From the IMG/VR virus record IMGVR_UViG_3300005941_000003, positions 181,964 through 245,963 of that record: a stretch of 64,000 nt of DNA. One strand, 5' to 3'. Both the position numbers and the translations under genes were made by a program. Below, in pieces: positions 4,897 through 58,605 of the stretch (position 1 is its first letter; every line of letters begins with the position of its first letter). The notes below the pieces were generated by a model that did not search any database, was not told the DNA's origin, and saw nothing but the letters and a program-made list of their open reading frames with translations.

Positions 4897-4899
4897 GAA

Positions 4900-7112: not shown

Positions 7113-7121
7113 GAGAAACGA

Positions 7122-11486: not shown

Positions 11487-12429
11487 TATTCGCGCACGCC
11501 GCGCAGCAAGAGCAAATAAAAAGACTATTAAATCTAACGAAGAATTGTATGCGTCATTTGATGACACATCATTTCAAGATGAAATAGAATATACTACAGG
11601 TCCAGCGGTTGAAGAAGTAGTCAACGATGACACTTTAATGCTAAAAAATGCAATGAATAACGCCGGTGAAAACATTGTACCATATGATTACGTCAGAATG
11701 GCAAACACTTATTCTAAGATTAACGTTGAACAACAGTTGGGCAGCTATAGAAATGCTATGGAATTTTTAGCACACATTCAGCTTGCAGAGAATGATACTA
11801 TTGTTAAACGTTTGCAAGATTTGATTTACAACTATCCAAACTTTGATGTAAGTAGTTTTGTAAACACATCCGAAGCAAAGCTATACTCATGGGTTGTTAG
11901 TACAATGCGACATACACTTGGAAGAAAATATCTTGGTGCAGTTTATGTACTAGGTGGTGGTATCGGCATTCTGCCGGCAATGTTGCTTGATGCTGAAATG
12001 AACATCGAAACTATCAGAAACTTCGATATCAACGGTGCGTGTCAATTTATTGCAGATGAAATGATGCAACGGGAAGTATTAGCAGACTGGAAGTTTAAAT
12101 CCAGTACACAAGATATGTATGATATCGATTACGCTAAACATATCTTTATTACTAGATTACAGAACGGTGTTTTAAGCGCGCCATTTAGTGAAATACCCGG
12201 TACTATTATTAATACAAACGTAAGCCATTTGCATCATCCGATGGATTGGTACAACATGTTGCCTGACATGCGCAGAGTTATTATAGTAGGCGAAACCGAT
12301 CCTAGCTTACCAAACCCATTCCCGAATTCACAAACGTTCAATAAAAAATTCCCAATGTCGTTTGAAATCTATACTGGTGTTCTTACTGTCGGTGACAAGC
12401 AATACTATATGAAAATAGGTCACAAATAA
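11476..12429 (+). CDS. Class I SAM-methyltransferase-like protein (paralog of next gene)
   Basis: VYVLGGGIG, NFDIN, INTNVSH; ATG at 11476 preferred. Confidence 0.6.
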   Translation: MVSDIRARRAARANKKTIKSNEELYASFDDTSFQDEIEYTTGPAVEEVVNDDTLMLKNAMNNAGENIVPYDYVRMANTYSKINVEQQLGSYRNAMEFLAHIQLAENDTIVKRLQDLIYNYPNFDVSSFVNTSEAKLYSWVVSTMRHTLGRKYLGAVYVLGGGIGILPAMLLDAEMNIETIRNFDINGACQFIADEMMQREVLADWKFKSSTQDMYDIDYAKHIFITRLQNGVLSAPFSEIPGTIINTNVSHLHHPMDWYNMLPDMRRVIIVGETDPSLPNPFPNSQTFNKKFPMSFEIYTGVLTVGDKQYYMKIGHK

Positions 12430-12432
12430 AAT

Positions 12433-13428
12433 ATGAATGCATCTGATCTAATCAACCGTTATGCAATGTTATACGGTGACAAGTTCCCAACTATACGGGA
12501 ACTTGAACGTGCAATAAACTCAAGCGAACTGTCAAGTGTGTTTAAGCTAGTAGCAGATGCTACATCCTCAGAAGAAAAAGCACAATTGATTAACGATTTG
12601 CGTAACATAACAATTGAACGTCCAAACATACATTTACTTTTCAGACTTATGGAAGCAATTGATCCAGACAATGAAAAGATAGAATTGTTGCGACATAACA
12701 TTGTATTGAAATCTAAGATACACGAAACTATTGACGAAGTGACTATGGGACAATACTTGATTCCATCTGGTATCAGACGACTAACCAGTAAGTTTGATGG
12801 TCCTGCACTTACTGATGCTCTTAGTCAAGGACAGATTGAAAGTAAACTGTGGCTTGTTAATACTGTTGCAGAACTAGACTTGGACTTGGGAAAGATGGTA
12901 TATGTCTGTGCAGGTTGGTACGGTGTTCTAGCAGCGTTGATGTTTGAACGTATATCAAATCGCTTTGGTAAAGTATACAGCTTTGATATTGATCCAAGCA
13001 CAGAGAACCCAGCCGATCAGTTGAATAAAGAGTATGTTGAAGTTAGCAGTAGGTTCAAAGCAATCGTAAAAGATATTCATGAACTTACGTATAAGAATGA
13101 AATACACGATGTAATTTATTACAAGTATCACACCGAACAGTCTTATGAAATCAATATGACTGAGGTTGAAGCAGACGATGTTACTTGTGTAATCAATACG
13201 TCCTGTGAACACGTTGAGAACTTTGAAGAATGGTGGGATAATATTCCAAAAGGTATGCGTGTGATTATGCAGAACAACAACTTTGTAGAACATGACGATC
13301 ACACTGTGGTAAATACAATCAAAAGTGAACAGCGGTGGGTAGACAAACTAAACGTTTCGAAGTTACTATATCGTGGAACACTATCTCTCCCCAAATATAA
13401 TCGCTTCATGGTAATGGGAATAAAATAA
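12433..13428 (+). CDS. Class I SAM-dependent methyltransferase
   Basis: GQIESKLWL, VCAGWYG, SFDID, INTSCEH. Confidence 0.7.
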   Translation: MNASDLINRYAMLYGDKFPTIRELERAINSSELSSVFKLVADATSSEEKAQLINDLRNITIERPNIHLLFRLMEAIDPDNEKIELLRHNIVLKSKIHETIDEVTMGQYLIPSGIRRLTSKFDGPALTDALSQGQIESKLWLVNTVAELDLDLGKMVYVCAGWYGVLAALMFERISNRFGKVYSFDIDPSTENPADQLNKEYVEVSSRFKAIVKDIHELTYKNEIHDVIYYKYHTEQSYEINMTEVEADDVTCVINTSCEHVENFEEWWDNIPKGMRVIMQNNNFVEHDDHTVVNTIKSEQRWVDKLNVSKLLYRGTLSLPKYNRFMVMGIK

Positions 13429-14525
13429 TGATTTACGGACACAATGGATACAAAGATGTGCGCGTAGTACACTTAGAAATTACAGAAAAATGTCAGGCAA
13501 CTTGTCCTATGTGTGACAGAAATCAGAACGGCGGCGCAGACAATCCAAATTTGGGATTACATGAACTAAAACTTGATGATATCAAGCAGATCATGCATCC
13601 AGAATTTGTTCAACAACTTGATCGTATTTACATGTGCGGTAACTTTGGTGATCCTATTGTAGCAACCGATACTCTTGAAGTATTCGATTACTTTCGTTCA
13701 CAGAAGAAAGAATTGACTCTTGGTATGAATACGAATGGCGGCGCAAAGAAACCAGAATGGTGGGCTGAACTTGCAAAAGTATTAGGTAACTGGAGTTATG
13801 TAAAGTTTTCGTTTGATGGTTTGGGAGATACTAACCATATGTATCGTCAAGGTGTTAACTGGGATATTGCGATTGAAAATGCACAAGCGTTTATAGATGC
13901 TGGCGGCAAAGCACATTGGGATTATTTGATATTTGAACATAACGAACACCAAGTAGAAAAAGCCAGAGCAATGAGTGAAGCCATGGGGTTTCAAAAGTTT
14001 ATTCCAAAGAAGACAGGTCGTTTCTTTTCGACTATGAGAGTAGCAGGTAAAGACACCCACCAAGCAGTTAATCGCAAGGGCGAAGAAAAGCAATTACTTT
14101 CAAAACCAAAAGAAGTGAAGTATCAAAACAAAGAGATTGGTAAGATTGAAGAACTAACATCAAAGTATGGTTCTTTGGAAAAATACTTTGACAATGTTGA
14201 GATATCATGTAAAGTTGCAGCAGAGAAGAATATGTATCTAAGTGCAGAAGGGTTGGTTCTTCCGTGCTGTTGGGTCGCAGGTAACATGTATAAGTGGTGG
14301 CAGAAGCCGGGTGAAAATCAAGTGTGGGAACTAATTCAACAAAGTGGCGGCAAAGATGTATTCGATGCAAAGAAACACGGCATTGCTGGTGTAATGAACA
14401 ATGAATATTTTTCTTATCGACTAGAGGAATCTTGGAACAAACCAAATACACATGCAGGCAAGCCGATGGTATGTTCGCAAAAATGTGGTAAAGAGTTTGA
14501 TGCATTTGCAGCACAATTTAAATAA
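13428..14525 (+). CDS. Radical SAM protein with C-terminal SPASM/twitch-like Cys cluster
   Basis: CQATCPMC, GNFGDP, C-terminal C..PCC..CSQKC. Confidence 0.9.
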   Translation: MIYGHNGYKDVRVVHLEITEKCQATCPMCDRNQNGGADNPNLGLHELKLDDIKQIMHPEFVQQLDRIYMCGNFGDPIVATDTLEVFDYFRSQKKELTLGMNTNGGAKKPEWWAELAKVLGNWSYVKFSFDGLGDTNHMYRQGVNWDIAIENAQAFIDAGGKAHWDYLIFEHNEHQVEKARAMSEAMGFQKFIPKKTGRFFSTMRVAGKDTHQAVNRKGEEKQLLSKPKEVKYQNKEIGKIEELTSKYGSLEKYFDNVEISCKVAAEKNMYLSAEGLVLPCCWVAGNMYKWWQKPGENQVWELIQQSGGKDVFDAKKHGIAGVMNNEYFSYRLEESWNKPNTHAGKPMVCSQKCGKEFDAFAAQFK

Positions 14526-14559: not shown

Positions 14560-15990
14560 ATGACAAAATATAAAGGTATCAACGGAATGGAGGATCTACC
14601 ATCTCCGACATTCTGTATTCTTCCATGGGTGCATCTGAGTACAAGACCTGACGGATCAATGCGAGTGTGTTGTACAGCTAACGCAAGTAGTGTGGGTCCA
14701 ACAAATGATAAAGAACATGGAGGACAAGTAGGTATTCTTAAAGACGAAGAAGGTCGCCCTAACAACCTAAACGTTAGTGACTTTAAGTCTAGTTGGAATA
14801 GTTCCTATATGAAAAACGTGCGTAAGCAAATGCTAAACGGTGAGCAACCTCCTAGCTGCATCAAATGTTATAAAGAGGAAGCAGCAGGTCACAATTCTAA
14901 GCGTATGTGGGAAACACACTATTGGAGTCAACGAACAGATGTTGAGCAACTAGTAGCAGATACCGATGAAGACGGAAGTGTACCACCACAGCTTGCATAT
15001 ATTGATTTGCGTTTCGGTACAAAATGTCAGCTTGCATGTGTCATGTGTTCGCCGCATGATAGTTCTGGTTGGATTAAAGATCATAGTAAGATTTTTCCAC
15101 TTGTCAAGAACGAATCGCTAAAAGAAACAATGCAGTGGAAAGATAAAGGTTCTACTAACGGTAGTTCCTACAACTGGCATAAACAGAACCCAGTATTTTG
15201 GGAACAGTTTTATGAACAGATCCCTAACATGCAACAGCTATACTTTGCTGGCGGAGAAGCACTTATCATAGAAGAACACTACGAAATTCTAGAAGAATGC
15301 ATCCGTCAAGGACATGCAAAGAACTTGGAACTTCGTTATAACTCTAACGCAGTTGAATGGCGTGAAGACTTGTTTGAACTGTGGTCTCATTTTAAACTTG
15401 TACGTTTCCATTATTCAGTAGATAGCATTCATGAAATGAACGACTACATACGTTACCCAAGTGAGTGGAAACGCACAGAAGAAGTATTCAGAATACTTGA
15501 TAACACAGAGGATCACGTAGAGGTCACAGTGGCGTGTGCAGTACAAGCATTGAACATTTACTACCTACCAGACTTTATCAAGTGGAAACTTGAACAAGGG
15601 TTTAAGAAGATCAACATGTGGCCATTCGGCGCAGGTGGTGTGAACTATCACTTTGTATATCACCCACCGCATTTGAATGTAAAAGTACTCCCAGAATGGT
15701 TCAAGGCAGAAACTCGTAAGAAGTATGAAGAATTTTATCCTTGGTGGAAAGCAAACTGGGAGAAAGGCGTCCCAGAATGGCACAAAGGTAAAGTGACTTA
15801 TGAACAATGGGAACAAGCAGGATATGGACTAAAGCGTCTTGAAGGTATGTTGCAGTTTATGGAAAGTGAGGACTGGAGCAATCGTCTTCCCGAAATGAAA
15901 GAGTACCTAGCTCTATGTGATCGCCAACGTAATGTAAGTTTCAGTGCGACATTCCCAGAAATGGCAGACATATTTAAGGATGTAGAATAA
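14560..15990 (+). CDS. Radical SAM protein with N-terminal twitch-like domain
   Basis: FCILPW..VCC, CIKC, CQLACVMC, FAGGE. Confidence 0.9.
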   Translation: MTKYKGINGMEDLPSPTFCILPWVHLSTRPDGSMRVCCTANASSVGPTNDKEHGGQVGILKDEEGRPNNLNVSDFKSSWNSSYMKNVRKQMLNGEQPPSCIKCYKEEAAGHNSKRMWETHYWSQRTDVEQLVADTDEDGSVPPQLAYIDLRFGTKCQLACVMCSPHDSSGWIKDHSKIFPLVKNESLKETMQWKDKGSTNGSSYNWHKQNPVFWEQFYEQIPNMQQLYFAGGEALIIEEHYEILEECIRQGHAKNLELRYNSNAVEWREDLFELWSHFKLVRFHYSVDSIHEMNDYIRYPSEWKRTEEVFRILDNTEDHVEVTVACAVQALNIYYLPDFIKWKLEQGFKKINMWPFGAGGVNYHFVYHPPHLNVKVLPEWFKAETRKKYEEFYPWWKANWEKGVPEWHKGKVTYEQWEQAGYGLKRLEGMLQFMESEDWSNRLPEMKEYLALCDRQRNVSFSATFPEMADIFKDVE

Positions 15991-16850
15991 TGGCTGTAGA
16001 ATTTTCATTACAGGAATTAAAAGAACTGTATTTGAGTGATGAATTTATAAAAATATATGATGATGCATTTTCTGGTTTTCCCGGATCCCCCAAGTATCCT
16101 GAAATATTAGAGATTGACGGGTTCCCTGTTCATTTTGATCCAAACGCAGAAATGATAAATGTGTCATTCAGTGGTGGTGCCGACAGTAGTATGTTGACCG
16201 TTTTGCTGGCAAAGTTAATACAAAAATACAAGTTAAAAACAAAAATAACACCAGTATACATGGCGCGTTTTACATACTCTAAGCCTTGGTTAGAACCAAT
16301 GGCATTGGATGTATACAATTATATAAAGAATATGTTTCCGGATATCATTCAAGATATACAAACAGGTTTTATTCCCGAAATCTTTGAAACAACAGATTTC
16401 ACTTTCAAATACGAAAAGCAATATGAAGATTTCCCCAAAGAAGCAGGCCTAGATGCAATTTATGCTGGTTCATTCGGTGTATATATGGTGAAAAAGTTAG
16501 GTGCATCAAGAACATATTCTGGTACAACAATGAACCCGCCTCCAATAAATGAAGATGCGGAGATAATACCTTTCAGAGAAGAAGAAGTAATTATGTCTAC
16601 CAATCATTGGGTGATTGGTCCATTTCATATTAATCCCCTTGGTTATTTACGTAAAGACTTTACTATGGCAATGTACGAAAAGTATGATTTATATGACTTA
16701 TTAAAACTTACTCGCAGTTGCGAGGTCAATCTAGTAGGATTGGGCGAAGACTACAAGTATGTGGATGGTGTATATCCACCGGAGTGCGGTCATTGTTTTT
16801 TCTGTCTAGAGAAAAAATGGGGAATAGAAAATATGGGAAAATTCTTGTAA
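15990..16850 (+). CDS. QueC/ExsB-like PP-loop ATPase
   Basis: SFSGGADS, TRSCE, CGHCFFC. Confidence 0.75.
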   Translation: MAVEFSLQELKELYLSDEFIKIYDDAFSGFPGSPKYPEILEIDGFPVHFDPNAEMINVSFSGGADSSMLTVLLAKLIQKYKLKTKITPVYMARFTYSKPWLEPMALDVYNYIKNMFPDIIQDIQTGFIPEIFETTDFTFKYEKQYEDFPKEAGLDAIYAGSFGVYMVKKLGASRTYSGTTMNPPPINEDAEIIPFREEEVIMSTNHWVIGPFHINPLGYLRKDFTMAMYEKYDLYDLLKLTRSCEVNLVGLGEDYKYVDGVYPPECGHCFFCLEKKWGIENMGKFL

Positions 16851-16882
16851 AATAAATACGAATATAATTCTAAAGGCATACC

Positions 16883-17731
16883 ATGAGTGACAGAACATAC
16901 CGAATAGTAACTGAAATAAAAAATAACGAAGATTTTATAAAAATTAATTCTGCGTTTGATTCTAAGTACAATACACAAACGTATTATGCAGAATTGACCC
17001 TTATGGAAATCTGGGACAATTTCATGGTAAAAAATCATATAGATAATATATGGTGCGGCGATACTCATAATATGTTTGTCAATTTTTTAATCGATAAAAA
17101 AGTTGAGAGAATATTTAAGGATAAAAACATCACTAGAATTAGGTTATCAGACCCTGACTTAGACGAAGATGATGTGCGGAAACTATATGCATTGTACTTG
17201 TTGAAAATGGATTTGATTGGAGGGGGTACTATTCATGATCCGATTTGTATCTCGGCATTCCCAAATGGTTCGCACCCAATACATCCCGGAACGTCGAGAA
17301 TGCTACTGGCAGCAGAAGTAGATCAGAGGGTTCCAGTCATATTAACAAATTACAACGACACTCTAAATTACGATTGCGCTGACAAATTAATACCGATAGA
17401 ACAAATGTCTTTTGATTTTGAAGATAAAGGTTTTATATTTGTGGAAGACTACACTGACGATCCAAACCATCCAAAAGGGGATGCGTATTTTTCTGCGGCA
17501 AAGACACCAGTTGAAAATAATATATCGGTTAATTACAAGGAAATAATAAACGTTTCAAATGATTATCAAATGTATAATCATCCAAAAACACATGCTAAAA
17601 AGGACATAGAGTTTGTATTCAAGAGAAAACGACTTTACATAGATGGTATGGTAGTTGCTGAATTTAGAGACGTTGGACCATATCATCGATGGTTTGTTAC
17701 GATGCAAGATCAGAGGCTAATAGAATTATAA
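16883..17731 (+). CDS. Hypothetical protein
   Basis: 282-aa AT-rich ORF after a late-promoter motif. Confidence 0.6.
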   Translation: MSDRTYRIVTEIKNNEDFIKINSAFDSKYNTQTYYAELTLMEIWDNFMVKNHIDNIWCGDTHNMFVNFLIDKKVERIFKDKNITRIRLSDPDLDEDDVRKLYALYLLKMDLIGGGTIHDPICISAFPNGSHPIHPGTSRMLLAAEVDQRVPVILTNYNDTLNYDCADKLIPIEQMSFDFEDKGFIFVEDYTDDPNHPKGDAYFSAAKTPVENNISVNYKEIINVSNDYQMYNHPKTHAKKDIEFVFKRKRLYIDGMVVAEFRDVGPYHRWFVTMQDQRLIEL

Positions 17732-18816
17732 TGTCAATAATGAATAGAATTGATAAAATAGAACTTGAGATAACTAGCGATTGTAATGCTCTGTGTCCCG
17801 GGTGCGCTAGAACGCAACATTTGGATAAAATAACAGTGCAAGATTTTGTTCTTGAAGATTTGAAGCGTATATTACCTACAAGAGAATATATTGATGGGAA
17901 GATATTCAAATTCTGTGGTGTTCTGGGTGATCCTGCTGCAAACGTAGAATGTCTTCCAATGGTAAAATATCTAGTGGAGAATGGAGGTTGGTGCCAGTTG
18001 AGTACAAATGGTGGAATTCAACCTGCTGCTTGGTGGAGAGAGTTGGGTGAACTGTCAGCTAGAACAAATAGTGTTGACGTTTCATTTTGTATTGATGGCC
18101 ACGAAGAAACAAACCACATCTATCGTGTTGGTACAAAATTTAGTACAATAGATAGAAACATTCAGGCATATAGTGACGGTGGTAACGGTATTGCATCTGC
18201 GACTTGGATTTATATTGTTTTTGATCACAACGAACATGAACTAGATAAAGCGAGAGAACACGCAGAAAGACTTGGATTCAAGTTTGCAACTCGTACAGGT
18301 ATGCGCAACAGCTATCACAACTGGGTTTCTGTCACTAAAAAGAAAGATAAAGAAACCAAGAAGATTGTAGAGGAAGTTAAGACCATTACAACAACTGGTG
18401 CGAAGGAACACTCAAAGAAAAAAGAAGTTGAAAAGATTGATCAATTCATTAAAGCCTACAGTAAAGGTAAAGAGATAGATCAAGAAAAGAAACTAGAAAT
18501 GATTAAGAGTATCACCTGCAAGATGATACACGAAGCAGAGATATTCATTGCAGCAGATCAAACAGTATGGCCTTGCTGTTTCTTACATGATAGCGCAGTA
18601 AAAAATCAAGATGCAATTAACGATAAACTTGCACAGTTTGGTGATAACTGGAATAGTCTAAAGCATCATACACTTGAAGAAATACTGTCCCACGTTTGGT
18701 TTAGACAATTGATAAGACTAAGTTGGGATCCAGAACATGAAATGCATTTGAAACGTTGCGTAAGAAGTTGTGCATCTAATAAAGCATATCAAAACGAAAT
18801 AAATTATGAATCTTGA
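17731..18816 (+). CDS. Radical SAM protein, paralog of 13428-14525
   Basis: CNALCPGC, GVLGDP, FDHNEH, PCC; ATG 17731 overlaps upstream TAA. Confidence 0.9.
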   Translation: MSIMNRIDKIELEITSDCNALCPGCARTQHLDKITVQDFVLEDLKRILPTREYIDGKIFKFCGVLGDPAANVECLPMVKYLVENGGWCQLSTNGGIQPAAWWRELGELSARTNSVDVSFCIDGHEETNHIYRVGTKFSTIDRNIQAYSDGGNGIASATWIYIVFDHNEHELDKAREHAERLGFKFATRTGMRNSYHNWVSVTKKKDKETKKIVEEVKTITTTGAKEHSKKKEVEKIDQFIKAYSKGKEIDQEKKLEMIKSITCKMIHEAEIFIAADQTVWPCCFLHDSAVKNQDAINDKLAQFGDNWNSLKHHTLEEILSHVWFRQLIRLSWDPEHEMHLKRCVRSCASNKAYQNEINYES

Positions 18817-18841
18817 CATTTCAAGAACAATCGCGTATAAT
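18813..18841 (+). promoter_or_regulatory. Perfect sigma70 promoter TTGACA-N17-TATAAT, directly preceded by GAATC
   Basis: TTGACATTTCAAGAACAATCGCGTATAAT. Confidence 0.75.
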
Positions 18842-18863
18842 AGAGACTAAAGAGAGATTATTA

Positions 18864-20282
18864 ATGGCAAATGAATCAATACCATGTTTCTATAGTTTTC
18901 ATGGTCTAAACTATAAAAACGGATATGTAACCACATGTCCGACTCAAACAGACCAATTCTATCTCATTGAAGGTAGAGAAAACCTACCATCTAATATATT
19001 CAATTCTCCAGGTTTCAGATTGCATCGCAAAGAAATGGTTGCAGGACAATGGTCTGAAGGTTGCCATTTGTGTGAAGAAAATGAACGTTGCAATCTACGT
19101 TCCATGCGACATGATTTCACTGCGGGTCAATGTGATCCAAAACAGTATACAGTGTTTGAAGGTATTCCAACAGACATGTACAACTATGAAACAGGCGAAA
19201 TGGATTTTGCTGGATTGCGACATGTTGAAATACGTTTTAATAATAGTTGCAACATGGCGTGTTTACATTGCGACCAAGTATACTCTAGTGGTTGGGAAAC
19301 GAAATTAAAATCTTACGAACCAACTGAACTAGATCATAAGCACGGTCTGCATCAGATAACTGGTCTACGCCACACTGACCGACAAGGTAACAAACTACCA
19401 AGAATTGATTTAAAAATGGATGAAGTCGAAATGATCATTCGTGATCTAAATGAAAACTTCCCAAATATTATGAAGATTGATTTCTCTGGTGGCGAAGTAC
19501 TAAAACAAAAGCAATTTTTCCTTGCACTTGATCTACTTGCTGAACACCCTAATGCAAAGAATATGGAAATATTCTTCTATACAAACTTTAACGCGGACTT
19601 CGATCCAGTTTCACTTTCGGAAAAGCTATCTAAATTTAGAAATCTGTCATTGAACATTTCAGTTGATGCTGGTAGAAATATGTATTCATATTTCAGAGAC
19701 GGGTCTTGGGATAAACTTGTAGAAAATTTAAACAAGTTTATGTCAGTACACAAGAAACCATCGAATATAAAGACTATAATTACAACATCGATTTATCAAG
19801 TGTTAGGAATTGTAGATGTGTTTCAATCTCTAATGACCCTTGATGTTGATATTATCGACTGGGCGCCAGTGCAATCACCTAGACAATTAAATCCAGCGTT
19901 AATAACTTTACACCATAGAGATTATATTGTTGCAGAGTTTGATAAGGTAAAGAAACTTATCTATGAAAACAGGTCCCGCAGGAACAATGAAATAAAACAA
20001 GGTAAAAAACTGAGAGGCTTTTTCTACAGCGGTGACAAACCAAGTTACGATGAATTATCCCATTCTTTAGATCGTTCCCTTAAAGAAATGTCACAGTACG
20101 TATTATCGGGTGTAATTCAAGATGAAGCAAATTGGGAAGCATTTTTACACTATGCAGGTACTGTAGATGGAATATTCAAAAAAGATTTTAACCAATCTGC
20201 ATTTAAAGACTTTAGATTAATAAAGACGCCAGAAGGCAATCAGTTACAGCGTTTAACAAACGGACCAGAGACACAGGAGTAA
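18864..20282 (+). CDS. Radical SAM protein with N-terminal twitch-like domain
   Basis: PCFY..TTCP, CHLC, CNMACLHC, FSGGE; start moved to ATG 18864 downstream of the promoter. Confidence 0.85.
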   Translation: MANESIPCFYSFHGLNYKNGYVTTCPTQTDQFYLIEGRENLPSNIFNSPGFRLHRKEMVAGQWSEGCHLCEENERCNLRSMRHDFTAGQCDPKQYTVFEGIPTDMYNYETGEMDFAGLRHVEIRFNNSCNMACLHCDQVYSSGWETKLKSYEPTELDHKHGLHQITGLRHTDRQGNKLPRIDLKMDEVEMIIRDLNENFPNIMKIDFSGGEVLKQKQFFLALDLLAEHPNAKNMEIFFYTNFNADFDPVSLSEKLSKFRNLSLNISVDAGRNMYSYFRDGSWDKLVENLNKFMSVHKKPSNIKTIITTSIYQVLGIVDVFQSLMTLDVDIIDWAPVQSPRQLNPALITLHHRDYIVAEFDKVKKLIYENRSRRNNEIKQGKKLRGFFYSGDKPSYDELSHSLDRSLKEMSQYVLSGVIQDEANWEAFLHYAGTVDGIFKKDFNQSAFKDFRLIKTPEGNQLQRLTNGPETQE

Positions 20283-20285
20283 ATC

Positions 20286-21293
20286 ATGGGTAAAATTAGC
20301 CTAGACAAAATTAATGCACTATACGAAAAGTTCCCATATACATTGGGAGATGACACATCGCATTCACGTGTTGTCATTGAAAATATTATTCAAGATGAAT
20401 ACGATACGCTTATGAATTCAAAAGATGAAATTATGCAGGGCGACATGCGACAGAATTTAGCAATGACACAGTTTCATATGACACAAAAGTTCAAAGAGCA
20501 TCTTTACAGTGTTGGATTGAAAACACACATTGTAGACGGTCTCGCGATACCTATTAACCCATCATGGAGACGTGTCGGTCTTGACCTTTCGGGTGGAGCA
20601 GATAGTGCTGCAATGGCTCTTGTGTTGTGTAAGATAATTGAAGAAAACAATTATGACATTAAAATTGAAATTATAACATTTATGCGTTGTTGGGAGACAC
20701 GCCCATGGCAGTTTGACATTGCATTGCGTGTATATAATGAGTTGAAAGCTCGATTCCCAAATATTATTGGTGAACGACACCTAACATTTATTCCGCCGCA
20801 GATTGAACATGGTGCAATCGGTCCATTGACACATCCGTCACTGCAAGGTTCATCAGGTGATCAAGTAATCGTATACACATACAACAGATTTATGGCGCAC
20901 AATTTAAAACTTGATGCAGTATATAATGCAACAACAAAGAACCCAACAGTTGACACCCCCACCGAAGATCGTATGAAAACCCGCGATGTCAACGAAGAAG
21001 ATATAGAAATTAATCAGCTTGCGTATGTATCCGACAATGGTGTTAACTGGGCTTTAGAACCATTGCGTCTAGTTGAAAAAGACTGGGTATTACAACAGTA
21101 CCTAAACAACAACGAAATCGCGTTGTTTAACGCAACAAGAAGTTGTGAAGGTGATTGCAATCATCCCAATCTAATGGGTATGGATGCCAAGTGGTATCAA
21201 ATGCACGGTAACCCAGACAACGTGCCCGAATGCGGTGATTGTTTCTGGTGTCAAGAACGCAATTGGGCAAAGCAACAGTTAGGAATTTCGTAA
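20286..21293 (+). CDS. QueC/ExsB-like PP-loop ATPase (second copy)
   Basis: LSGGADS, TRSCE, CGDCFWC. Confidence 0.75.
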   Translation: MGKISLDKINALYEKFPYTLGDDTSHSRVVIENIIQDEYDTLMNSKDEIMQGDMRQNLAMTQFHMTQKFKEHLYSVGLKTHIVDGLAIPINPSWRRVGLDLSGGADSAAMALVLCKIIEENNYDIKIEIITFMRCWETRPWQFDIALRVYNELKARFPNIIGERHLTFIPPQIEHGAIGPLTHPSLQGSSGDQVIVYTYNRFMAHNLKLDAVYNATTKNPTVDTPTEDRMKTRDVNEEDIEINQLAYVSDNGVNWALEPLRLVEKDWVLQQYLNNNEIALFNATRSCEGDCNHPNLMGMDAKWYQMHGNPDNVPECGDCFWCQERNWAKQQLGIS

Positions 21294-21296
21294 TAG

Positions 21297-22616
21297 ATGT
21301 CTAAGACTTTTTGTCCTATTCCTTGGATGTTTATGGCAGCACGTTCTAACGGAGATGTTAGAGTGTGCTGTCAAGCCAATGTAACAAAGAATAAAGGTGT
21401 TATCAGAAAACCGGATGGAACAGCATATAATGCTGGTAGAGACGATTTAGTTGAGTCTCGCAATGCTGAAATGATGAAGGCAATGCGAGTAAACATGCTA
21501 AACGGAATCTGGAGTGAAGAATGTGGACGTTGCAGAAGTGAAGAAGAAAACGGTTTAGACTCACGCAGAAAATACGAAATAGACAAGAAGATGTATTCGT
21601 TTGAACGTGCAGTAAATGAAACTGCGGAAGATGGTACAATTGATGTTGACAAAACAGAAATCATGTTCTACGATTTGCGCTTCGGTAATTTCTGTAATCT
21701 AAAGTGTCGCATGTGTGGTCCAACTGATAGTGACTCTTGGTACGACGATTACATGAAACTAACAGGAACTGATTCATTTTGGGAAACAAGTGGACCAGTT
21801 AAGATTTATCCTAAAGGTAATAAGCTAGTAGCAGATGGTTACGACTGGCCTAACTATGAACCTTTCTGGGAATTCTTGGAAAAGAATGCAAAGAATATCA
21901 AACACGTATATTTTGCAGGCGGTGAACCAATGTTAATTGAGCGTCACTATGATTTTCTTGAACGTTGTGTTGATCAAGGTGTTGCAAAAAACATTGTTAT
22001 AGAGTATAATACAAATATGAGTACTCTACCAACACGCGTAACGGAATTATGGAAGAACTTTAAAATGGTTCAGATAGGTGCAAGTGTTGATGGTATGGGA
22101 CCTGTTCTAGAATATCAACGTAATCCAGCAAAATGGGATAAGACGCTTCGAAATCTAAAGACTGTAGATGGTTTGCCAATGAATATCATGTCTTGGTTGG
22201 CTGTTACTGTTACAGCATATAATGTTAATCATCTTATTGACTTTATGAAATGGAAATTACAAGAGAGTGAATTCAAGCGTATAAGCTCAACAAAGAAACG
22301 TCCTATAATGACGCACCATGTAGCGCATCACCCAAAGCATCTAAATATACGTGTTCTACCCGACAAGATGAAATCTGAACTTACACAGAAGTATGAAGAT
22401 TTTGTTGTCTGGGTTGAAGAACAGGGATTCCCAGAATATGTAATTGAGGCTGCCAAACACGCACGTGATAGCATATGTAGTTATATGAATAGCGATTCAT
22501 ATCACGCCGATCATTGGGATGAGTTTGTAGACTATACTAATAAATTAGATAAAATAAGAAACGAAAGTTTGATTGAAGTCGAACCTATGTTTAAGGAATA
22601 TATAAATGAGTTTTGA
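21297..22616 (+). CDS. Radical SAM protein with N-terminal twitch-like domain
   Basis: FCPIPW..VCC, CGRC, CNLKCRMC, FAGGEP. Confidence 0.9.
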   Translation: MSKTFCPIPWMFMAARSNGDVRVCCQANVTKNKGVIRKPDGTAYNAGRDDLVESRNAEMMKAMRVNMLNGIWSEECGRCRSEEENGLDSRRKYEIDKKMYSFERAVNETAEDGTIDVDKTEIMFYDLRFGNFCNLKCRMCGPTDSDSWYDDYMKLTGTDSFWETSGPVKIYPKGNKLVADGYDWPNYEPFWEFLEKNAKNIKHVYFAGGEPMLIERHYDFLERCVDQGVAKNIVIEYNTNMSTLPTRVTELWKNFKMVQIGASVDGMGPVLEYQRNPAKWDKTLRNLKTVDGLPMNIMSWLAVTVTAYNVNHLIDFMKWKLQESEFKRISSTKKRPIMTHHVAHHPKHLNIRVLPDKMKSELTQKYEDFVVWVEEQGFPEYVIEAAKHARDSICSYMNSDSYHADHWDEFVDYTNKLDKIRNESLIEVEPMFKEYINEF

Positions 22617-23877
22617 TACAGTTGACCTATTAACTGGCGATATCTTTCAGGTATCATGGGACCTTGGGCGCAGATGCAACTACGACTGTAGTTATTGCCC
22701 AGTACACAGACACGACAATTTTAGTCCACATGCAACATTGCAAGAGTTGAAGAACAGTACAGACTTCTTGTTCAAGTACATGGACACCTATCTAGAACAT
22801 AGAACACTAAAGGGTGCAAGTATTAGCTTCACCGGTGGTGAACCTACTGTAAACCCTAACTTTATTCCATTCATTGAATATCTTAAAAAAGCATATGCAG
22901 AACAATATGCAGATCGTTGGGATTCCTCATTTGCTTTAACAAGCAACGGTGCAATGAGTAAGAAGATGGCTAATGCTGTTATCGAACATTTCCATCACAT
23001 CACTGTTAGCTATCATGCAGAAAGTGATGACAAGCTAAAGAAGCAAGTGCGTGATCGTATTCTACAGTTCCATGAAGCAATGCATAGCAATCCTGAAGGC
23101 TTCTTCTCAGTGTCGGTAAACGTTATGTTTCACGCACAATACTTTGATGAATGTGTTGACCTTTGCAGATTCCTAGAGAAGCACAGCGTCAAATATGTTC
23201 CTCGTGTTATTGGCGAAGAACCAGAAAGTCCAAGCGATCAAGCACACCGTTATAATGATGCACAAATCCAATGGATGAAAGATTACTGGAATGACAAGAA
23301 CGCTGCATTGAACGATCCTACACCAAAAGATGTACAGATTGAATCACAACATGCAGTGACACAAGTTAATACTGAAGGTAAGTCAGAACCAAAGAAACTT
23401 GCTATGACTATTGGTCGTCCTTGCTGCGGATCACGCGAAATGTGTCTATCTAGTCAAGGTGATACTCGTAAGAGTACATTCGTTAATTTCAGAAACTTCA
23501 AGGGTTGGCATTGTTCTGTTAACTGGTTTTTCCTACACCTTGAACAACAGACTGATAGTGTATACCATCACCAAACGTGTCAAGCTAAATTTGATCAAAC
23601 TAGAGGTCGTTTAGGTAAGATTAGTGAAGGTGATAAGATTATAGATAAGTTAAAAGAACAACTTGCAGCAAAAGAAATGCCAACTGTTATCTGCCCAAAG
23701 CAAACATGCGGTTGTGGTCTTTGCGCACCAAAGAGTGCATTTAAAGAAAAGTATTTTGAAACACTAGATCGTCATATTGTAGATATGTCAATCTTTGATA
23801 ACAGTAAGAACGAAGTGAGTAAAGTTACTCCACTAATTCCCGGCGTAAACTTTGAAATGGATAGCGATATTCTATGA
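22606..23877 (+). CDS. Radical SAM protein
   Basis: CNYDCSYC, FTGGEP, C-terminal CPKQTCGCGLC. Confidence 0.9.
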   Translation: MSFDTVDLLTGDIFQVSWDLGRRCNYDCSYCPVHRHDNFSPHATLQELKNSTDFLFKYMDTYLEHRTLKGASISFTGGEPTVNPNFIPFIEYLKKAYAEQYADRWDSSFALTSNGAMSKKMANAVIEHFHHITVSYHAESDDKLKKQVRDRILQFHEAMHSNPEGFFSVSVNVMFHAQYFDECVDLCRFLEKHSVKYVPRVIGEEPESPSDQAHRYNDAQIQWMKDYWNDKNAALNDPTPKDVQIESQHAVTQVNTEGKSEPKKLAMTIGRPCCGSREMCLSSQGDTRKSTFVNFRNFKGWHCSVNWFFLHLEQQTDSVYHHQTCQAKFDQTRGRLGKISEGDKIIDKLKEQLAAKEMPTVICPKQTCGCGLCAPKSAFKEKYFETLDRHIVDMSIFDNSKNEVSKVTPLIPGVNFEMDSDIL

Positions 23878-25055
23878 CAAAAGAAATTCAAAAAGATGCA
23901 AACTACTGGTCACAATATGATTTCACTGAAATTCCATATCATGACTTAGTTAAAGTAGGACAGCGTACACTTTTATATAGAGATTTGTTTTCGGTGTCAT
24001 GGTTGCTAGGTCGTTTCTGTAACTACAAGTGTTCTTATTGTTGGCCTTATGCTCGTTCTGATCGTAAAGACCATCGCCCAACAGAACTATGTTTAGCGAC
24101 AATTGATGAAATAAAGAGGCAAGCCCGTGACAATGGTTTCAATAGTTTTCACTTTAGTCTTTCTGGGGGTGAGCCTACGTTTCACCCAGGATACCTTGAC
24201 ATTCTTAGACACCTTGCTGATGATGTTGGCAATACTAACTATACTTCTGTACATATGACAACAAACATGTCACGTAATTTAAAGTGGCATCAGGAATATT
24301 GTGATACAGTTGCAGCATTTCACCGTGCAAGTATCACTGCGTCATATCATAGCGAATATGCGAAGAAAGATGAATTTGCAGATAAACTTCTATTCTGTAT
24401 GGAACACGATGTTCAAGTGACAATCAATATGGTTCTTGTTCCTGAATGGTTTGATCGTGACTGGGAGAACGCAATGTACTTCCACAATCGTGGTATCAAC
24501 GTTACACTAAAGCCACAGTCTGATCCCACTGCATCATTCGTGGTTAAAGGTTATACAGACGAACAACTTGCTATCATGCGCAATGGTATGCCGCAACGCG
24601 CATATACTGATGAAATTCAAAAAGAAACTGGGGTGAAAGTTGTAAGACCTAAACCACACAAAAGCCTATGGACGATGGATGCAGAAAACGGTGACGACAA
24701 AAATGTTCCACCGATTATGCAAGTTGAGTTTGAGGATTCGACTGGTAAGAAATGGTATATGGATCAAGCAGAACGCTTCAATGCCTTTAACTTCAACAAG
24801 TTCAAAGGTTGGGAGTGTACAAGTGGGTTTAAGGGTATTGTTATTCGTGAACCAGATGGAACAATCAAACGTTCATATAGTTGTTCTGACCGACCACTTG
24901 GTTTCGTTGAGGGTGGGTTCAGACTTTTCGACTCGCCAAGACCATGTATCTCAGATAGTTGTGTATCAAGTGCAGACAGTAAGATACCAAAACGGGCACC
25001 GGGCGCGCAAGTGCCAATCTATCCCGGAGATCAAAGTTTTAAGTTCGGAATATAA
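23874..25055 (+). CDS. Radical SAM protein, paralog of the preceding gene
   Basis: CNYKCSYC, LSGGEP, FKGWEC, CISDSC. Confidence 0.9.
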   Translation: MTKEIQKDANYWSQYDFTEIPYHDLVKVGQRTLLYRDLFSVSWLLGRFCNYKCSYCWPYARSDRKDHRPTELCLATIDEIKRQARDNGFNSFHFSLSGGEPTFHPGYLDILRHLADDVGNTNYTSVHMTTNMSRNLKWHQEYCDTVAAFHRASITASYHSEYAKKDEFADKLLFCMEHDVQVTINMVLVPEWFDRDWENAMYFHNRGINVTLKPQSDPTASFVVKGYTDEQLAIMRNGMPQRAYTDEIQKETGVKVVRPKPHKSLWTMDAENGDDKNVPPIMQVEFEDSTGKKWYMDQAERFNAFNFNKFKGWECTSGFKGIVIREPDGTIKRSYSCSDRPLGFVEGGFRLFDSPRPCISDSCVSSADSKIPKRAPGAQVPIYPGDQSFKFGI

Positions 25056-29994: not shown

Positions 29995-30024
29995 ATGATT
30001 CGTCCTTTCAGTCATTACTCTATT

Positions 30025-30052: not shown

Positions 30053-30056
30053 GAAT

Positions 30057-58328: not shown

Positions 58329-58605
58329 TTTTTAAACTCTCCACCCATTTGTCATAACCAATTTCAAATGGTTCGATAGGAAATGCTAAAGTCCAAGTCT
58401 GCTGTGCTTCAATGGGTTCGGCGTACTGCATGTGTAGCAACACGATACCCCGCTTTGGTTTCCATTCGAATTCTACAGGATCAATGTCACTTTTATAACC
58501 TTCAGGTGTGCTACAAATTTTACGCGCAATCTGAATAAGTTCTTTTTGTTTGAACTTAGGCTTGTATGCTTGTTGTGGGAATTTTGTTTTATAGGGTCCG
58601 GTCAT
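58315..58605 (-). CDS. Hypothetical protein
   Basis: 96-aa ORF overlapping neighbours. Confidence 0.55.
   Translation of the reverse strand: MTGPYKTKFPQQAYKPKFKQKELIQIARKICSTPEGYKSDIDPVEFEWKPKRGIVLLHMQYAEPIEAQQTWTLAFPIEPFEIGYDKWVESLKNENT

What the first reader, a model, noticed from the sequence alone, without database searches (positions are those of the whole stretch)
14560..22616. Expansion of radical SAM proteins with the auxiliary Fe-S domain at the N-terminus
Seen: five genes (1982, 14560, 18864, 21297, 60162) have Cx(2)P[WF]...CC...CxxC-type motifs before the CxxxCxxC motif (less regular in 18864). Known: twitch/SPASM domains are normally C-terminal, and an N-terminal-twitch family of unknown function exists mainly in environmental sequences. 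Inference: phage-driven paralog diversification, as expected for variable substrates or an arms race.
Basis: partly seen in the sequence, partly recalled or inferred. Interest (0 to 1): 0.6.

Follow-up and report, generated by a model that had tools for sequence, protein, structure and literature searches.

The report
Phage array of N-twitch radical SAM enzymes
An uncultured 342-kb marine phage carries 14 old, diverged copies of a radical SAM enzyme whose extra iron-sulfur domain sits at the front of the protein, inside a roughly 60-kb sugar-modifying gene island; matching copies in bacterial chromosomes argue against a phage arms race.

Summary
All five named genes score above the curated cut-off of NCBIfam NF033640 (N_Twi_rSAM). 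The 246-kb virus record holds 13 such genes and the 342-kb version of the same phage holds 14. It also has five radical SAM (rSAM) genes with C-terminal twitch/SPASM-type cysteines and one B12-rSAM.

Four N-terminal cysteines are conserved. The domain's only significant match among solved structures is the twitch domain of BtrN, with all four cysteines aligned.

- The paralogues are old, 17-35% identical to each other.
- Each has orthologues in related jumbo phages (63-69%). Several have one-to-one orthologues in chromosomal arrays of bacteria grouped with Bdellovibrionales-titled MAGs (42-61%).
- Between strains, gene 14560-15990 shows 8 synonymous and 0 non-synonymous changes.

The context is a sugar-tailoring island: nucleotidyltransferases, dehydrogenases, an epimerase/dehydratase, aminotransferases, C- and O-methyltransferases, a carbamoyltransferase, and GT10-like glycosyltransferases recognised only by predicted fold. 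PP-loop ATPases abut the N-twitch genes. The phage also encodes SAM synthetase and A-type Fe-S carriers.

Most likely these are two-cluster tailoring enzymes of an unusual glycan. The substrate is inferred, not shown. rSAM-rich marine phages were already reported in 2017.

The parts
14560..15990 (+). N-twitch radical SAM paralogue, 476 aa. It is the best match to the family model. Its orthogroup is shared with related phages and with bacterial contigs.
   Evidence: NF033640 424 bits. Invariant C19/C37/C100/C103 plus C156/C160/C163 and GGE231-233. Orthogroup with 100% support including G002:C50 and G003:C35. 8 synonymous and 0 non-synonymous strain SNPs. At least 219 IMG/VR contigs encode a relative; the 80 kept are at least 80% identical in the best segment.
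18813..20282 (+). N-twitch radical SAM paralogue, 489 aa from TTG 18813 or 472 aa from ATG 18864. This is the 'less regular' copy.
   Evidence: NF033640 192 bits. All four N-terminal Cys kept, with a single Cys at the CC position. Orthogroup with L014 and L015 at 100% support. Gene calls of 472 and 489 aa.
21297..22616 (+). N-twitch radical SAM paralogue, 439 aa. This is the copy that was modelled.
   Evidence: NF033640 370 bits. AF2 model pLDDT 94.6, pTM 0.90, with an N-terminal beta-hairpin followed by helices. Core residues 121-404 match anSME at Z 13.5, CteB 12.3, BlsE 12.2. More than 100 orthologue clusters at 63-70% identity.
1982..3181 (-). N-twitch radical SAM paralogue, 399 aa.
   Evidence: NF033640 238 bits; Pfam SPASM at residues 14-76. 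Orthogroup with L014 and L015 copies.
60162..61244 (-). N-twitch radical SAM paralogue, 360 aa. The longest ORF runs to 61394 but overlaps tRNA-Glu. It sits next to a B12-rSAM gene.
   Evidence: NF033640 215 bits. tRNA-Glu at 61283-61357(-). The ENA gene call is 360 aa.
15990..16850 (+). PP-loop ATPase partner, 286 aa, with SGGADS and a C-terminal Cys4 motif. Its start overlaps the stop of the N-twitch gene by one base.
   Evidence: Invariant SGGxDS and SC...CxxCxxC.E..W in 10 homologues. 9 of 10 family members directly abut an N-twitch gene. Weak PP-loop hits in PDB to CarA, NAD synthetase and GMP synthase.
20286..21293 (+). PP-loop ATPase partner, 335 aa, lying between two N-twitch genes with 3-base gaps.
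   Evidence: SGGADS at residue 102. Atlas neighbours are viral QueC-like and PAPS-reductase-like clusters: feature score 0.97-0.98, TM 0.65-0.74. Adjacency.
13428..14525 (+). Radical SAM, 365 aa, with its extra cysteines at the C-terminus (C261, C280, C281, C349, C353). This is the usual domain order.
   Evidence: Pfam Radical_SAM. Its best NCBIfam hit is the core of NF033640 only. Cys positions. Bacterial homologues lie beside the 14560 orthologue.
17689..18816 (+). Radical SAM, 375 aa (361 aa from ATG 17731), paralogue of 13428-14525 with the same C-terminal Cys pattern.
   Evidence: Gene call.
22606..23877 (+). Radical SAM, 423 aa, with a Cys-rich SPASM-like C-terminus.
   Evidence: Pfam Radical_SAM 47 bits. 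Cys at 273-373.
23874..25055 (+). Radical SAM, 393 aa, with four C-terminal Cys. It is the last gene of the + strand island.
   Evidence: Pfam. Cys positions. 58-61% identical homologues lie next to the 14560 orthologue on bacterial contigs.
58589..60136 (-). B12-binding radical SAM, 515 aa, adjacent to the fifth N-twitch gene.
   Evidence: Pfam Radical_SAM plus B12-binding. NCBIfam B12-rSAM families, all below cut-off.
2..1225 (+). Virus-only family without Pfam, NCBIfam or PHROG match (three paralogues in the phage), predicted to be a GT-B-fold, GT10-like glycosyltransferase.
   Evidence: No Pfam, NCBIfam or PHROG hit. AF2 pLDDT 85.9. Best structural match is H. pylori alpha-1,3-fucosyltransferase at Z 10.4 with 246 residues aligned; most other rows are GT-B glycosyltransferases. 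Relatives are fused to DegT, an SDR epimerase or a methyltransferase.
1222..1989 (-). Cytidylyltransferase plus a cupin (mannose-6-phosphate isomerase C-terminal type).
   Evidence: Pfam.
5329..6054 (+). DUF6071 protein. Its N-terminus (G-C-S-F-T-Y-G) resembles a GDSL/SGNH hydrolase motif.
   Evidence: Pfam DUF6071. Sequence. The SGNH resemblance is read from the sequence and is an inference.
7122..8630 (+). Carbamoyltransferase (NodU/CmcH type).
   Evidence: Pfam Carbam_trans_N and Carbam_trans_C, 141 and 180 bits.
8670..13428 (+). Three proteins of unknown function: one of 938 aa, then a paralogue pair of 322 and 331 aa. All are conserved in related phages.
   Evidence: No Pfam, NCBIfam or PHROG hits. 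Family membership.
16883..17731 (+). Unknown 282-aa protein inside the rSAM run. It is under strong constraint between strains.
   Evidence: No family hit. 9 synonymous and 0 non-synonymous SNPs.
25089..26491 (-). Thymidylate synthase and dihydrofolate reductase on the opposite strand. They mark the right-hand boundary of the island.
   Evidence: Pfam Thymidylat_synt 342 bits. DHFR_1. The same boundary is seen in related phage L014.
39416..40495 (-). Phage-encoded S-adenosylmethionine synthetase, a likely SAM supply for about 20 rSAM enzymes and the methyltransferases.
   Evidence: All three Pfam S-AdoMet_synt domains. The supply role is inferred.
62328..63068 (-). Fatty-acid-desaturase-like di-iron oxygenase near the B12-rSAM and N-twitch pair. 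In related phage L015 it is contiguous with the main island.
   Evidence: Pfam FA_desaturase. L015 gene order.

Best explanation
The genes encode two-cluster radical SAM enzymes of the N_Twi_rSAM family.

**Enzyme mechanism.** The CxxxCxxC cluster with the GGE motif binds SAM and cleaves it to a 5'-deoxyadenosyl radical, which abstracts a hydrogen from the substrate. An N-terminal twitch domain, homologous to the C-terminal twitch of BtrN, holds an auxiliary [4Fe-4S] cluster on four cysteines. Because that cluster would be fully Cys-ligated, it most likely serves as an electron acceptor or relay, as in BtrN and anSME, rather than as a substrate ligand. This part is inferred by homology.

**Pathway role.** The 14 copies are not a recent burst. 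They are an old multigene family in which each paralogue is a separately conserved enzyme. They work as tailoring steps in a roughly 60-kb, mostly one-strand island of a 342-kb jumbo myovirus. The island makes and decorates unusual sugars or a glycan. It contains:
- nucleotidyltransferases, UDP-sugar dehydrogenases and an SDR epimerase/dehydratase
- DegT and class I/II aminotransferases
- C- and O-methyltransferases and a carbamoyltransferase
- cupins and GT10-like glycosyltransferases

PP-loop ATPases with a C-terminal four-Cys motif are gene-coupled to the N-twitch enzymes. They probably adenylate a carboxylate or carbonyl on the same intermediates.

**Support functions.** The phage backs this chemistry with its own SAM synthetase, two A-type Fe-S carriers and a peroxiredoxin.

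**Origin.** Whole multi-paralogue modules are shared with chromosomal arrays of bacteria grouped with Bdellovibrionales-titled MAGs. This points to en-bloc gene exchange and possibly to the host.

**Shown:** family membership, cysteine conservation, twitch homology, age and orthology of the paralogues, purifying selection, gene context.
**Inferred:** cluster binding and role, a sugar or glycan substrate, the PP-loop chemistry, the target of glycosylation, the host.
For: **Family and domain**
- NF033640 scores of 192-424 bits for all five genes, and 13 genes above cut-off in the record. 14 in the 92%-complete record.
- Invariant N-terminal Cys.
- The N-terminal domain profile has one significant PDB hit, the BtrN twitch domain (E 5e-8), with the four Cys aligned, including BtrN C169, C232 and C235.
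- The AF2 model is confident (pLDDT 94.6). Its N-terminus starts with a beta-hairpin followed by helices. Its core is closest to the SPASM/twitch enzymes anSME, CteB, BlsE and SkfB at Z 12-13.5.
- A protein of the same phage (L009:18067-18981) has the same domain at its C-terminus.

**Age and selection**
- 17-35% identity between paralogues.
- Orthogroups shared among phages.
- One-to-one pairs with the contiguous array in bacterial genome G028.
- 8 synonymous and 0 non-synonymous changes in gene 14560-15990 between strains.

**Sugar context in the phage**
- DegT, Methyltransf_13/14, TylF, two UDPG/GDP-mannose dehydrogenases, an SDR epimerase/dehydratase, NTP_transf_3, cupin, Aminotran_1_2 and CTP_transf plus mannose-6-phosphate isomerase C-terminal domain.
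- Carbamoyltransferase.
- GT10-like fold of the family that includes window 2-1225. Its relatives are fused to DegT, an SDR or a methyltransferase.

**Sugar context in bacteria**
- NTP-transferase, an APH-type kinase, GT2 and GDSL/SGNH proteins beside the G028 array.
- A double-GT2 protein of 982 aa beside the conserved trio on G003:C35.

**PP-loop coupling**
- 9 of 10 PP-loop genes abut an N-twitch gene.

**Support genes**
- MetK, two PF01521 Fe-S carriers, AhpC.
Against: - No substrate is identified and no member of NF033640 has a known reaction that I could find.
- Classical GT2 was not found in the 246-kb record. The glycosyltransferase call rests on a fold match of Z 10.4, not on sequence.
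- The closest solved structures by core include peptide- and protein-modifying enzymes (anSME, CteB, SkfB, SuiB) as well as the sugar enzyme BlsE.
- Related phages add Asp/Arg hydroxylase and TauD genes, which can also act on proteins.
- The PP-loop partners were found in the phage contigs and in G003:C275, a contig of undetermined origin, but not in the four bacterial loci sampled.
- No RNA data were found.
- Cluster binding is untested.
Confidence: 0.6

Rival explanations
1. The N-twitch rSAMs are peptide or protein maturases. They would install crosslinks, epimerisations or oxidations on a ribosomal peptide or on virion proteins, such as the giant structural proteins encoded just upstream of the island.
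For: - The closest solved cores are anSME (Z 13.5), CteB, SkfB and SuiB, all peptide- or protein-modifying SPASM/twitch enzymes.
- The island starts right after ORFs of 1435 and 2912 aa; the 2912-aa ORF matches a virion-structural PHROG.
- Related phages carry Asp/Arg beta-hydroxylase and TauD genes in the same island.
- A bacterial array contains an 808-aa protein with an Asp_Arg_Hydrox domain.
Against: - No RRE/PqqD-type domain was reported by Pfam or NCBIfam. The N-terminus is taken up by the twitch domain.
- No plausible precursor-peptide ORF was seen where I looked (window 3900-7200), and genes in the island overlap or are a few bases apart.
- Recognisable neighbours are mostly nucleotide-sugar enzymes, in both phage and bacteria.
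- The only PDB match of the N-terminal domain is BtrN, which acts on an aminocyclitol.
Confidence: 0.15
2. The island modifies nucleotides or phage DNA (hypermodified bases or glycosylated DNA), with the rSAMs and PP-loop ATPases acting on a base or nucleotide.
For: - The island abuts thymidylate synthase and DHFR.
- The PP-loop partners resemble viral QueC-like clusters.
- Weak sub-threshold hits to viperin and QueE models.
- The GT-B model also resembles T4 alpha-glucosyltransferase at Z 9.0-9.3.
- Cytidylyltransferases are present.
Against: - No TGT/DpdA and no QueC family match in the 246-kb record.
- ThyA and DHFR lie on the opposite strand and look like the usual T4-type nucleotide module.
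- One-to-one orthologues sit in bacterial chromosomes between housekeeping genes, next to GT2, a nucleotidyltransferase and SGNH genes.
- The sugar C- and O-methyltransferases, DegT and the dehydrogenases point to deoxy- or amino-sugar pathways.
Confidence: 0.1
3. One reading: the copies arose by duplication inside phages and diversify quickly under an arms race with the host.
For: - Cassette content and order differ between related phages.
- A few recent tandem pairs exist: 170541/173236, 152034/153826 and L014 15264/16366.
- Atlas structural neighbours are viral.
- rSAM cassettes are reported in hypervariable 'host recognition clusters' of pelagimyophages (PMC7029224).
Against: - Paralogues are 17-35% identical and scattered on the tree like shuffled labels.
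- One-to-one bacterial orthologues exist.
- 8:0 and 9:0 synonymous to non-synonymous changes in two genes, and no indels, between strains.
- Identical proteins recur in about 60-68 blocks of the assembly collection.
Confidence: 0.1

Closest known systems
NCBIfam NF033640, N_Twi_rSAM (twitch domain-containing radical SAM protein)
   Same: Full-length matches above the curated cut-off for all five genes and for 13-14 genes in the phage. Same order: twitch domain first, then the rSAM core.
   Different: The family has no assigned reaction. New here are the copy number per genome, the phage setting, the coupling to PP-loop ATPases and the sugar-pathway context.
BtrN (2-deoxy-scyllo-inosamine dehydrogenase), the founding twitch-domain enzyme (PDB 4m7s/4m7t)
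   Same: It is the only significant PDB match of the N-terminal domain (E 5e-8). Four Cys align with four Cys of BtrN's twitch domain. From my own knowledge of the BtrN structure paper, these ligate its auxiliary [4Fe-4S] cluster. Its substrate is carbohydrate-like.
   Different: In BtrN the twitch domain follows the rSAM core; here it precedes it. The cores are not especially close, and BtrN is not among the top core matches. No evidence of the same reaction.
SPASM/twitch enzymes anSME, CteB, SkfB, SuiB and BlsE
   Same: Best structural matches of the rSAM core, Z 11.6-13.5 over about 210-225 residues. BlsE acts on a sugar nucleoside.
   Different: Foldseek TM-scores are only 0.31-0.36, E down to 5e-7. 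There are 4 rather than 7-8 auxiliary Cys, no RRE domain, and sequence identity is 14-19%.
rSAM-rich marine T4-like phage genomes with Fe-S carrier genes (Nishimura et al. 2017, PMC5332604), and rSAM cassettes in pelagimyophage host-recognition clusters (PMC7029224)
   Same: An environmental T4-like genome of 183 kb with an A-type carrier gene and 12 rSAM genes was already reported. rSAM cassettes in hypervariable regions next to structural genes were noted. Here the numbers are 14 plus 6 rSAM genes, two A-type carriers and a position after giant virion protein genes.
   Different: In the passages I read, those papers did not describe the N-terminal twitch, the orthology with bacterial arrays, the PP-loop coupling or the sugar-pathway context. 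I could not compare the sequences.
QueC and other PP-loop ATP pyrophosphatases (for the partner genes)
   Same: SGGxDS motif plus a C-terminal SC...CxxCxxC motif. From my own knowledge, this motif resembles the Zn site of QueC. Atlas neighbours are viral QueC-like clusters.
   Different: The Pfam QueC model finds nothing in the record at E 0.1 or better. No other queuosine or deazaguanine genes. PDB profile hits cover only the PP-loop motif.

Membership tests
NF033640 N_Twi_rSAM | Whole-protein HMM score at or above the curated cut-off of 170 bits | tested here: met
   238, 424, 192, 370 and 215 bits for the five window genes. 13 genes above cut-off in the record. 14 in the 342-kb record.
NF033640 N_Twi_rSAM | Cys-bearing twitch domain located N-terminal to the CxxxCxxC motif | tested here: met
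   C19, C37, C100 and C103 precede C156/C160/C163 and are invariant in 13 paralogues. Three are invariant and one is kept in at least 90% of 58 sequences.
Radical SAM superfamily | CxxxCxxC cluster motif and GGE SAM-binding motif in a partial TIM-barrel core | tested here: met
   Pfam PF04055 above cut-off in all five genes. Invariant CxxxCxxC and GGE. Predicted core matches solved rSAM enzymes at Z 11-13.5.
Twitch domain (as in BtrN) | Homology to a solved twitch domain, with the cluster-ligating Cys conserved | tested here: met
   The profile of the N-terminal domain hits only BtrN residues 163-238 (E 5e-8), with four Cys aligned. The model begins with a beta-hairpin (strands 12-15 and 20-22) followed by helices.
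Twitch domain (as in BtrN) | Actually binds one auxiliary [4Fe-4S] cluster | not testable with these tools
   Needs iron and sulfide analysis, EPR or Moessbauer spectroscopy, or a structure of purified protein.
SPASM domain (two auxiliary clusters) | Seven to eight conserved Cys, including the CxxCxxxxxCxxxC block | tested here: not met
   Only four conserved Cys lie outside the rSAM motif. The Pfam SPASM hits are marginal, 21-22 bits, and cover the N-terminal domain only.
RiPP rSAM/SPASM maturases | RRE (PqqD-like) recognition domain and an adjacent precursor peptide gene | tested here: not met
   No RRE family reported by Pfam or NCBIfam; every named RiPP maturase model scores far below its cut-off. 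No candidate precursor ORF in window 3900-7200, and genes are tightly packed. Small ORFs elsewhere in the island were not searched exhaustively.
QueC (for the PP-loop partners) | Match to the QueC family model and presence of the deazaguanine pathway | tested here: not met
   PF06508 finds nothing in the record at E 0.1 or better. No TGT/DpdA. Only the SGGxDS motif and a Cys4 motif are shared.
GT10-like GT-B glycosyltransferase (for window 2-1225 and its paralogues) | GT-B fold with best similarity to GT10 fucosyltransferases | tested here: inconclusive
   Best match is H. pylori alpha-1,3-FucT at Z 10.4 with 246 residues aligned. FUT9 scores 9.0 and most other rows are GT-B enzymes. Foldseek E-values are only 2e-3 or weaker and there is no Pfam GT10 hit.

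The most novel reading that the evidence does not exclude
The N-twitch rSAMs, with their PP-loop partners, form a previously uncharacterised toolkit of radical carbohydrate-tailoring enzymes. Each paralogue would perform a different radical step (oxidation, epimerisation, deoxygenation, C-C or C-N bond formation) on nucleotide-sugar or glycan intermediates. A jumbo phage and bacteria grouped with Bdellovibrionales-titled MAGs would exchange this toolkit as whole modules to build a heavily decorated surface or virion glycan.
Probability: 0.35. Interest if true: 0.75.

Novelty: new member of a known kind. Interest (0 to 1): 0.55.

Why it matters
- The family is curated by name only. A single genome with 14 diverged, individually conserved paralogues next to recognisable sugar-pathway enzymes gives a concrete set of substrates to try, and so a route to new radical SAM chemistry.
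- The one-to-one orthology with chromosomal arrays means the function could be studied by knock-out and glycan analysis if a cultivable bacterium with such an array is found, although the phage itself is uncultured.
- A phage that brings its own SAM synthetase and Fe-S carriers along with about 20 rSAM genes shows how far jumbo phages can go in importing oxygen-sensitive metabolism.
- The shared modules offer a host hypothesis for a widespread marine phage group: at least 219 IMG/VR contigs carry one orthogroup.
- It corrects the 'arms race' reading. These are stable, constrained enzymes.

Tried and rejected
- **Near-identical DNA in GenBank phages:** none.
- **tblastn of two paralogues against 50,697 phage records:** only 3-4 weak hits at 22-30% identity.
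- **The genome search on ENA and NCBI loci:** those records are not held.
- **Literature:** no paper names NF033640 or N_Twi_rSAM, and none holds all of 'radical SAM', 'jumbo', 'phage' and 'paralogs'.
- **Deazaguanine DNA modification:** considered because of the QueC-like partners. No QueC model match and no TGT/DpdA in the record.
- **Classical GT2:** not found in the record.
- **Pfam, NCBIfam and PHROGs on the interleaved unknown genes:** nothing useful.
- **PDB profile search with the GT-like family:** no meaningful hit.
- **PDB profile search with the PP-loop family:** only the PP-loop motif matched.
- **Complex prediction for N-twitch 14560-15990 with PP-loop 15990-16850:** no answer (score 0.16, mark 0.32). 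This is neither for nor against binding.
- **Sequencing runs:** no RNA run holds the stretch, so expression could not be checked.
- **Model coordinates:** not available to scripts, so Cys-Cys distances in the model could not be measured.
- **Census outside one bacterial phylum:** not possible, because I had handles only in that phylum.

Full report
**1. What the sequence is.** The window is the last 64 kb of a 245,963-bp IMG/VR virus record (G000:C1:181964-245963; linear, CheckV 67%).
- The record encodes a tail sheath, portal, large terminase, ribonucleotide reductase and an SbcC-like nuclease.
- Its terminase is 55% identical to that of Pseudomonas jumbo phage PA5oct and 52% to Agrobacterium phage Atu_ph07. 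It is therefore an uncultured jumbo myovirus of the wider T4-like assemblage.
- The same phage occurs on contigs of 341-342 kb. One IMG/VR record of 342,181 bp is rated 92% complete.
- The stretch is near-identical in 13 marine metagenome runs. A 1.5%-diverged strain occurs in two further studies.

**2. The observation.**
- Pfam sees Radical_SAM in all five and a marginal SPASM hit at the N-terminus of two.
- The record holds 13 such genes. Eight lie just upstream of the window. The 342-kb record has a fourteenth.
- In the alignment of the 13 paralogues, four Cys before the rSAM motif are invariant (C19, C37, C100, C103 in the 14560 gene). So are C156/C160/C163 and GGE231-233. With 58 sequences from several phages and bacteria, three N-terminal Cys stay invariant and one is kept in at least 90%.
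- The copy at 18864 is indeed less regular but keeps all four Cys.
- The long ORF 60162-61394 overlaps tRNA-Glu, so the gene starts at 61244.

**3. Is the N-terminal domain a twitch domain?**
- A profile of the N-terminal roughly 100 residues finds exactly one significant family among all PDB sequences: the C-terminal twitch domain of BtrN (residues 163-238, E 5e-8). The four Cys align with four BtrN Cys, including C169, C232 and C235. From my own knowledge of the BtrN structure, these ligate its auxiliary [4Fe-4S] cluster.
- An AlphaFold2 model of the 21297 gene is confident (pLDDT 94.6, pTM 0.90). It starts with a beta-hairpin followed by helices.
- Its core (residues 121-404) aligns best with the SPASM/twitch enzymes anSME (Z 13.5), CteB, BlsE and SkfB. 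The Foldseek TM-scores to these enzymes are only 0.33-0.36.
- The same phage also encodes a 304-aa rSAM (L009:18067-18981) whose C-terminal tail aligns with the N-terminal domain of the others, all four Cys included. Both domain orders therefore coexist in one genome.
- The other non-B12 rSAMs of the island carry their extra Cys at the C-terminus.
Cluster binding itself is untested.

**4. Age and origin of the copies.**
- The paralogues share only 17-35% identity.
- On a maximum-likelihood tree of 48 proteins from this phage and six related contigs, its 13 copies need 12 label changes, no fewer than shuffled labels. They fall into orthogroups with 98-100% support that are shared by 3-6 genomes. 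Only a few tandem pairs look younger.
- Orthologues of the 21297 gene at 63-70% identity fill more than 100 protein clusters, on contigs of up to 357 kb.
- At least 219 IMG/VR contigs encode a relative of the 14560 gene; the 80 kept are at least 80% identical in the best segment.
- Four 'MAGs' recovered by similarity carry 14-22 matches to the family model each. One, G001, contains a 349.5-kb contig that is a related phage.
- In a sample of 151 genomes of the phylum of G002, whose record is titled Pseudobdellovibrionaceae, 31 have the family. Counts per genome reach at least 11, some on megabase-sized contigs.
- In G028, a 2.66-Mb contig, six N-twitch and four other rSAM genes lie within 22 kb, near BipA, Dus and an aldehyde dehydrogenase.
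- G002:C50 is bacterial (polyphosphate kinase, PEPCK, M13 peptidase) and ends in an array of nine N-twitch genes.
- A tree that adds these sequences pairs individual phage paralogues with individual bacterial ones:
  - 157083 with G028_24560 (100)
  - 159354 with G028_25994 (99)
  - 153826 with G028_27343 and G028_28803 (100)
  - 196523 with G002:C50 and G003:C35 copies (100)
- Identities for these pairs are 42-50% and 57-61%.
- The four phage genes at 152-160.6 kb mirror a contiguous bacterial block. The paralogues had therefore already diverged from one another before these phage and bacterial copies separated, and modules moved en bloc. The direction of transfer is not resolved.

**5. Selection.** The 1.5%-diverged strain differs at 87-88 positions over 5,941 bases, with no indels. 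Forty of about 90 variant positions were listed, apparently those up to 18028 in order of position. Among them:

| Gene | Synonymous | Non-synonymous |
|---|---|---|
| N-twitch 14560-15990 | 8 | 0 |
| Unknown 16883-17731 | 9 | 0 |
| PP-loop 15990-16850 | 9 | 6 |
| rSAM 17731-18816 | 5 | 3 |

This argues against arms-race diversification of the N-twitch gene.

**6. Context.** From about genome position 145.7 to 207 kb nearly all genes are on one strand, often overlapping by 1-8 bases. The run follows ORFs of 1435 and 2912 aa; the 2912-aa ORF matches a virion-structural PHROG.
- Recognisable genes upstream of the window:
  - a DegT aminotransferase
  - an NDP-hexose C-methyltransferase type (Methyltransf_13/14)
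  - a TylF O-methyltransferase
  - two UDP-glucose/GDP-mannose dehydrogenases
  - an SDR epimerase/dehydratase
  - NTP_transf_3
  - a cupin
  - an AhpC peroxiredoxin
  - a class I/II aminotransferase
- In the window there are a cytidylyltransferase-cupin, a carbamoyltransferase and DUF6071.
- No classical GT2 was found. However, a family without Pfam, NCBIfam or PHROG match that has three paralogues (window 2-1225 is one) models confidently (pLDDT 85.9). Its best match is H. pylori alpha-1,3-fucosyltransferase (Z 10.4), followed mostly by GT-B glycosyltransferases. Relatives are fused to DegT, an SDR epimerase or a methyltransferase.
- Two window genes (15990-16850 and 20286-21293) belong to a PP-loop ATPase family with invariant SGGxDS and a C-terminal SC...CxxCxxC motif. 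Nine of its ten members in the sampled contigs directly abut an N-twitch gene.
- The bacterial arrays sit beside a nucleotidyltransferase, an APH-type kinase, GT2 and GDSL/SGNH proteins, and beside a double-GT2 protein.
- Elsewhere the phage encodes SAM synthetase (window 39416-40495). Just beyond the window's end it encodes two A-type Fe-S carrier proteins.

**7. Most likely function.** The enzymes are two-cluster rSAMs. The auxiliary cluster is held by four Cys and is probably an electron relay, as in BtrN and anSME. They act as separate tailoring steps on unusual sugars or a glycan, some together with a PP-loop adenylating enzyme. This rests on homology and on gene context in two independent settings, phage and bacterial chromosome. 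It is not demonstrated. Whether the product decorates the virion, the host surface or something else is open.

**8. Rivals.**
- **Peptide or protein maturation** is favoured by the closest solved cores and by hydroxylase genes in relatives. It lacks an RRE domain and a precursor gene.
- **Nucleotide or DNA modification** is suggested by the ThyA/DHFR neighbours and the QueC-like partners. It lacks DpdA and QueC and does not fit the bacterial chromosomal context.

**9. Novelty.** The family is curated (NF033640). A marine T4-like genome with an A-type carrier and 12 rSAM genes was reported in 2017 (PMC5332604). rSAM cassettes in pelagimyophage hypervariable clusters were noted in 2020 (PMC7029224). 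I did not find these points described elsewhere:
- that these genes are N-twitch enzymes
- their number per genome
- the PP-loop coupling
- the sugar-pathway setting with GT10-like transferases recognised only by fold
- the one-to-one orthology with bacterial arrays
- the evidence for purifying selection

I therefore class it as a new member of a known kind, with real value as an entry point for enzyme discovery.

**10. Limits.**
- No expression data.
- No answer from the complex prediction.
- No census outside one bacterial phylum.
- The SNP list was truncated to 40 of about 90 positions.
- The trees are a quick IQ-TREE run and a FastTree run, with many long branches.

Noticed in passing
window 61283-63938 (-): An array of nine tRNA genes (Glu, Asp, Pro, Val, Gly, Ala, Leu, Ser, Asn) interleaved with the FA-desaturase-like gene. 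tRNA-Glu overlaps the 5' extension of ORF 60162-61394.
   Followed up: partly
window 39416-40495 (-): A phage-encoded S-adenosylmethionine synthetase with all three Pfam domains. It fits the SAM demand of about 20 rSAM enzymes and several methyltransferases.
   Followed up: partly
L038:5142-5815 (same phage, about 5 kb beyond the window's end on the 341-kb ENA contig): Two adjacent A-type Fe-S carrier genes (PF01521, IscA/HesB type). A similar pairing of a carrier gene with 12 rSAM genes was reported for a marine T4-like genome (PMC5332604).
   Followed up: partly
window 33986-35014 (-): An SbmA/BacA-like inner-membrane transporter gene (259 bits), unusual in a phage. From my own knowledge, some family members import peptides or cobalamin, which would be relevant to the B12-rSAM. 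This link is speculative.
   Followed up: no
window 15990-16850 (+): Between strains the PP-loop gene has 6 non-synonymous and 9 synonymous changes, while its neighbours have 0:8 and 0:9. It looks markedly less constrained.
   Followed up: no
L009:18067-18981 (genome 178067-178981): A 304-aa rSAM with the same twitch domain at its C-terminus. Both domain orders occur in one genome, which suggests a domain swap or permutation within the family.
   Followed up: partly
G001:C34 (L019, L023-L027); G002-G004: A 349.5-kb related phage contig sits inside a deposited bacterial 'MAG'. Several Bdellovibrionales-titled MAGs carry N-twitch arrays, some on bacterial contigs. This suggests either a host link or mis-binning.
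   Followed up: partly
L013:7034-8851 (genome 152034-153851): This 605-aa N-twitch paralogue carries an insertion of about 125 residues inside the rSAM core that the other copies lack.
   Followed up: no
window 28654-31905 (-): A DUF2201 metallopeptidase/VWA-like protein and an AAA_5 ATPase lie close together (with a 210-aa ORF between them), resembling a MoxR/VWA-type pair.
   Followed up: no
G154 (IMGVR_UViG_3300027757_000397): In the 342-kb record the rSAM island spans both contig ends (319-342 kb and 1-30 kb). The assembly is therefore opened inside the island, consistent with a circularly permuted genome.
   Followed up: no
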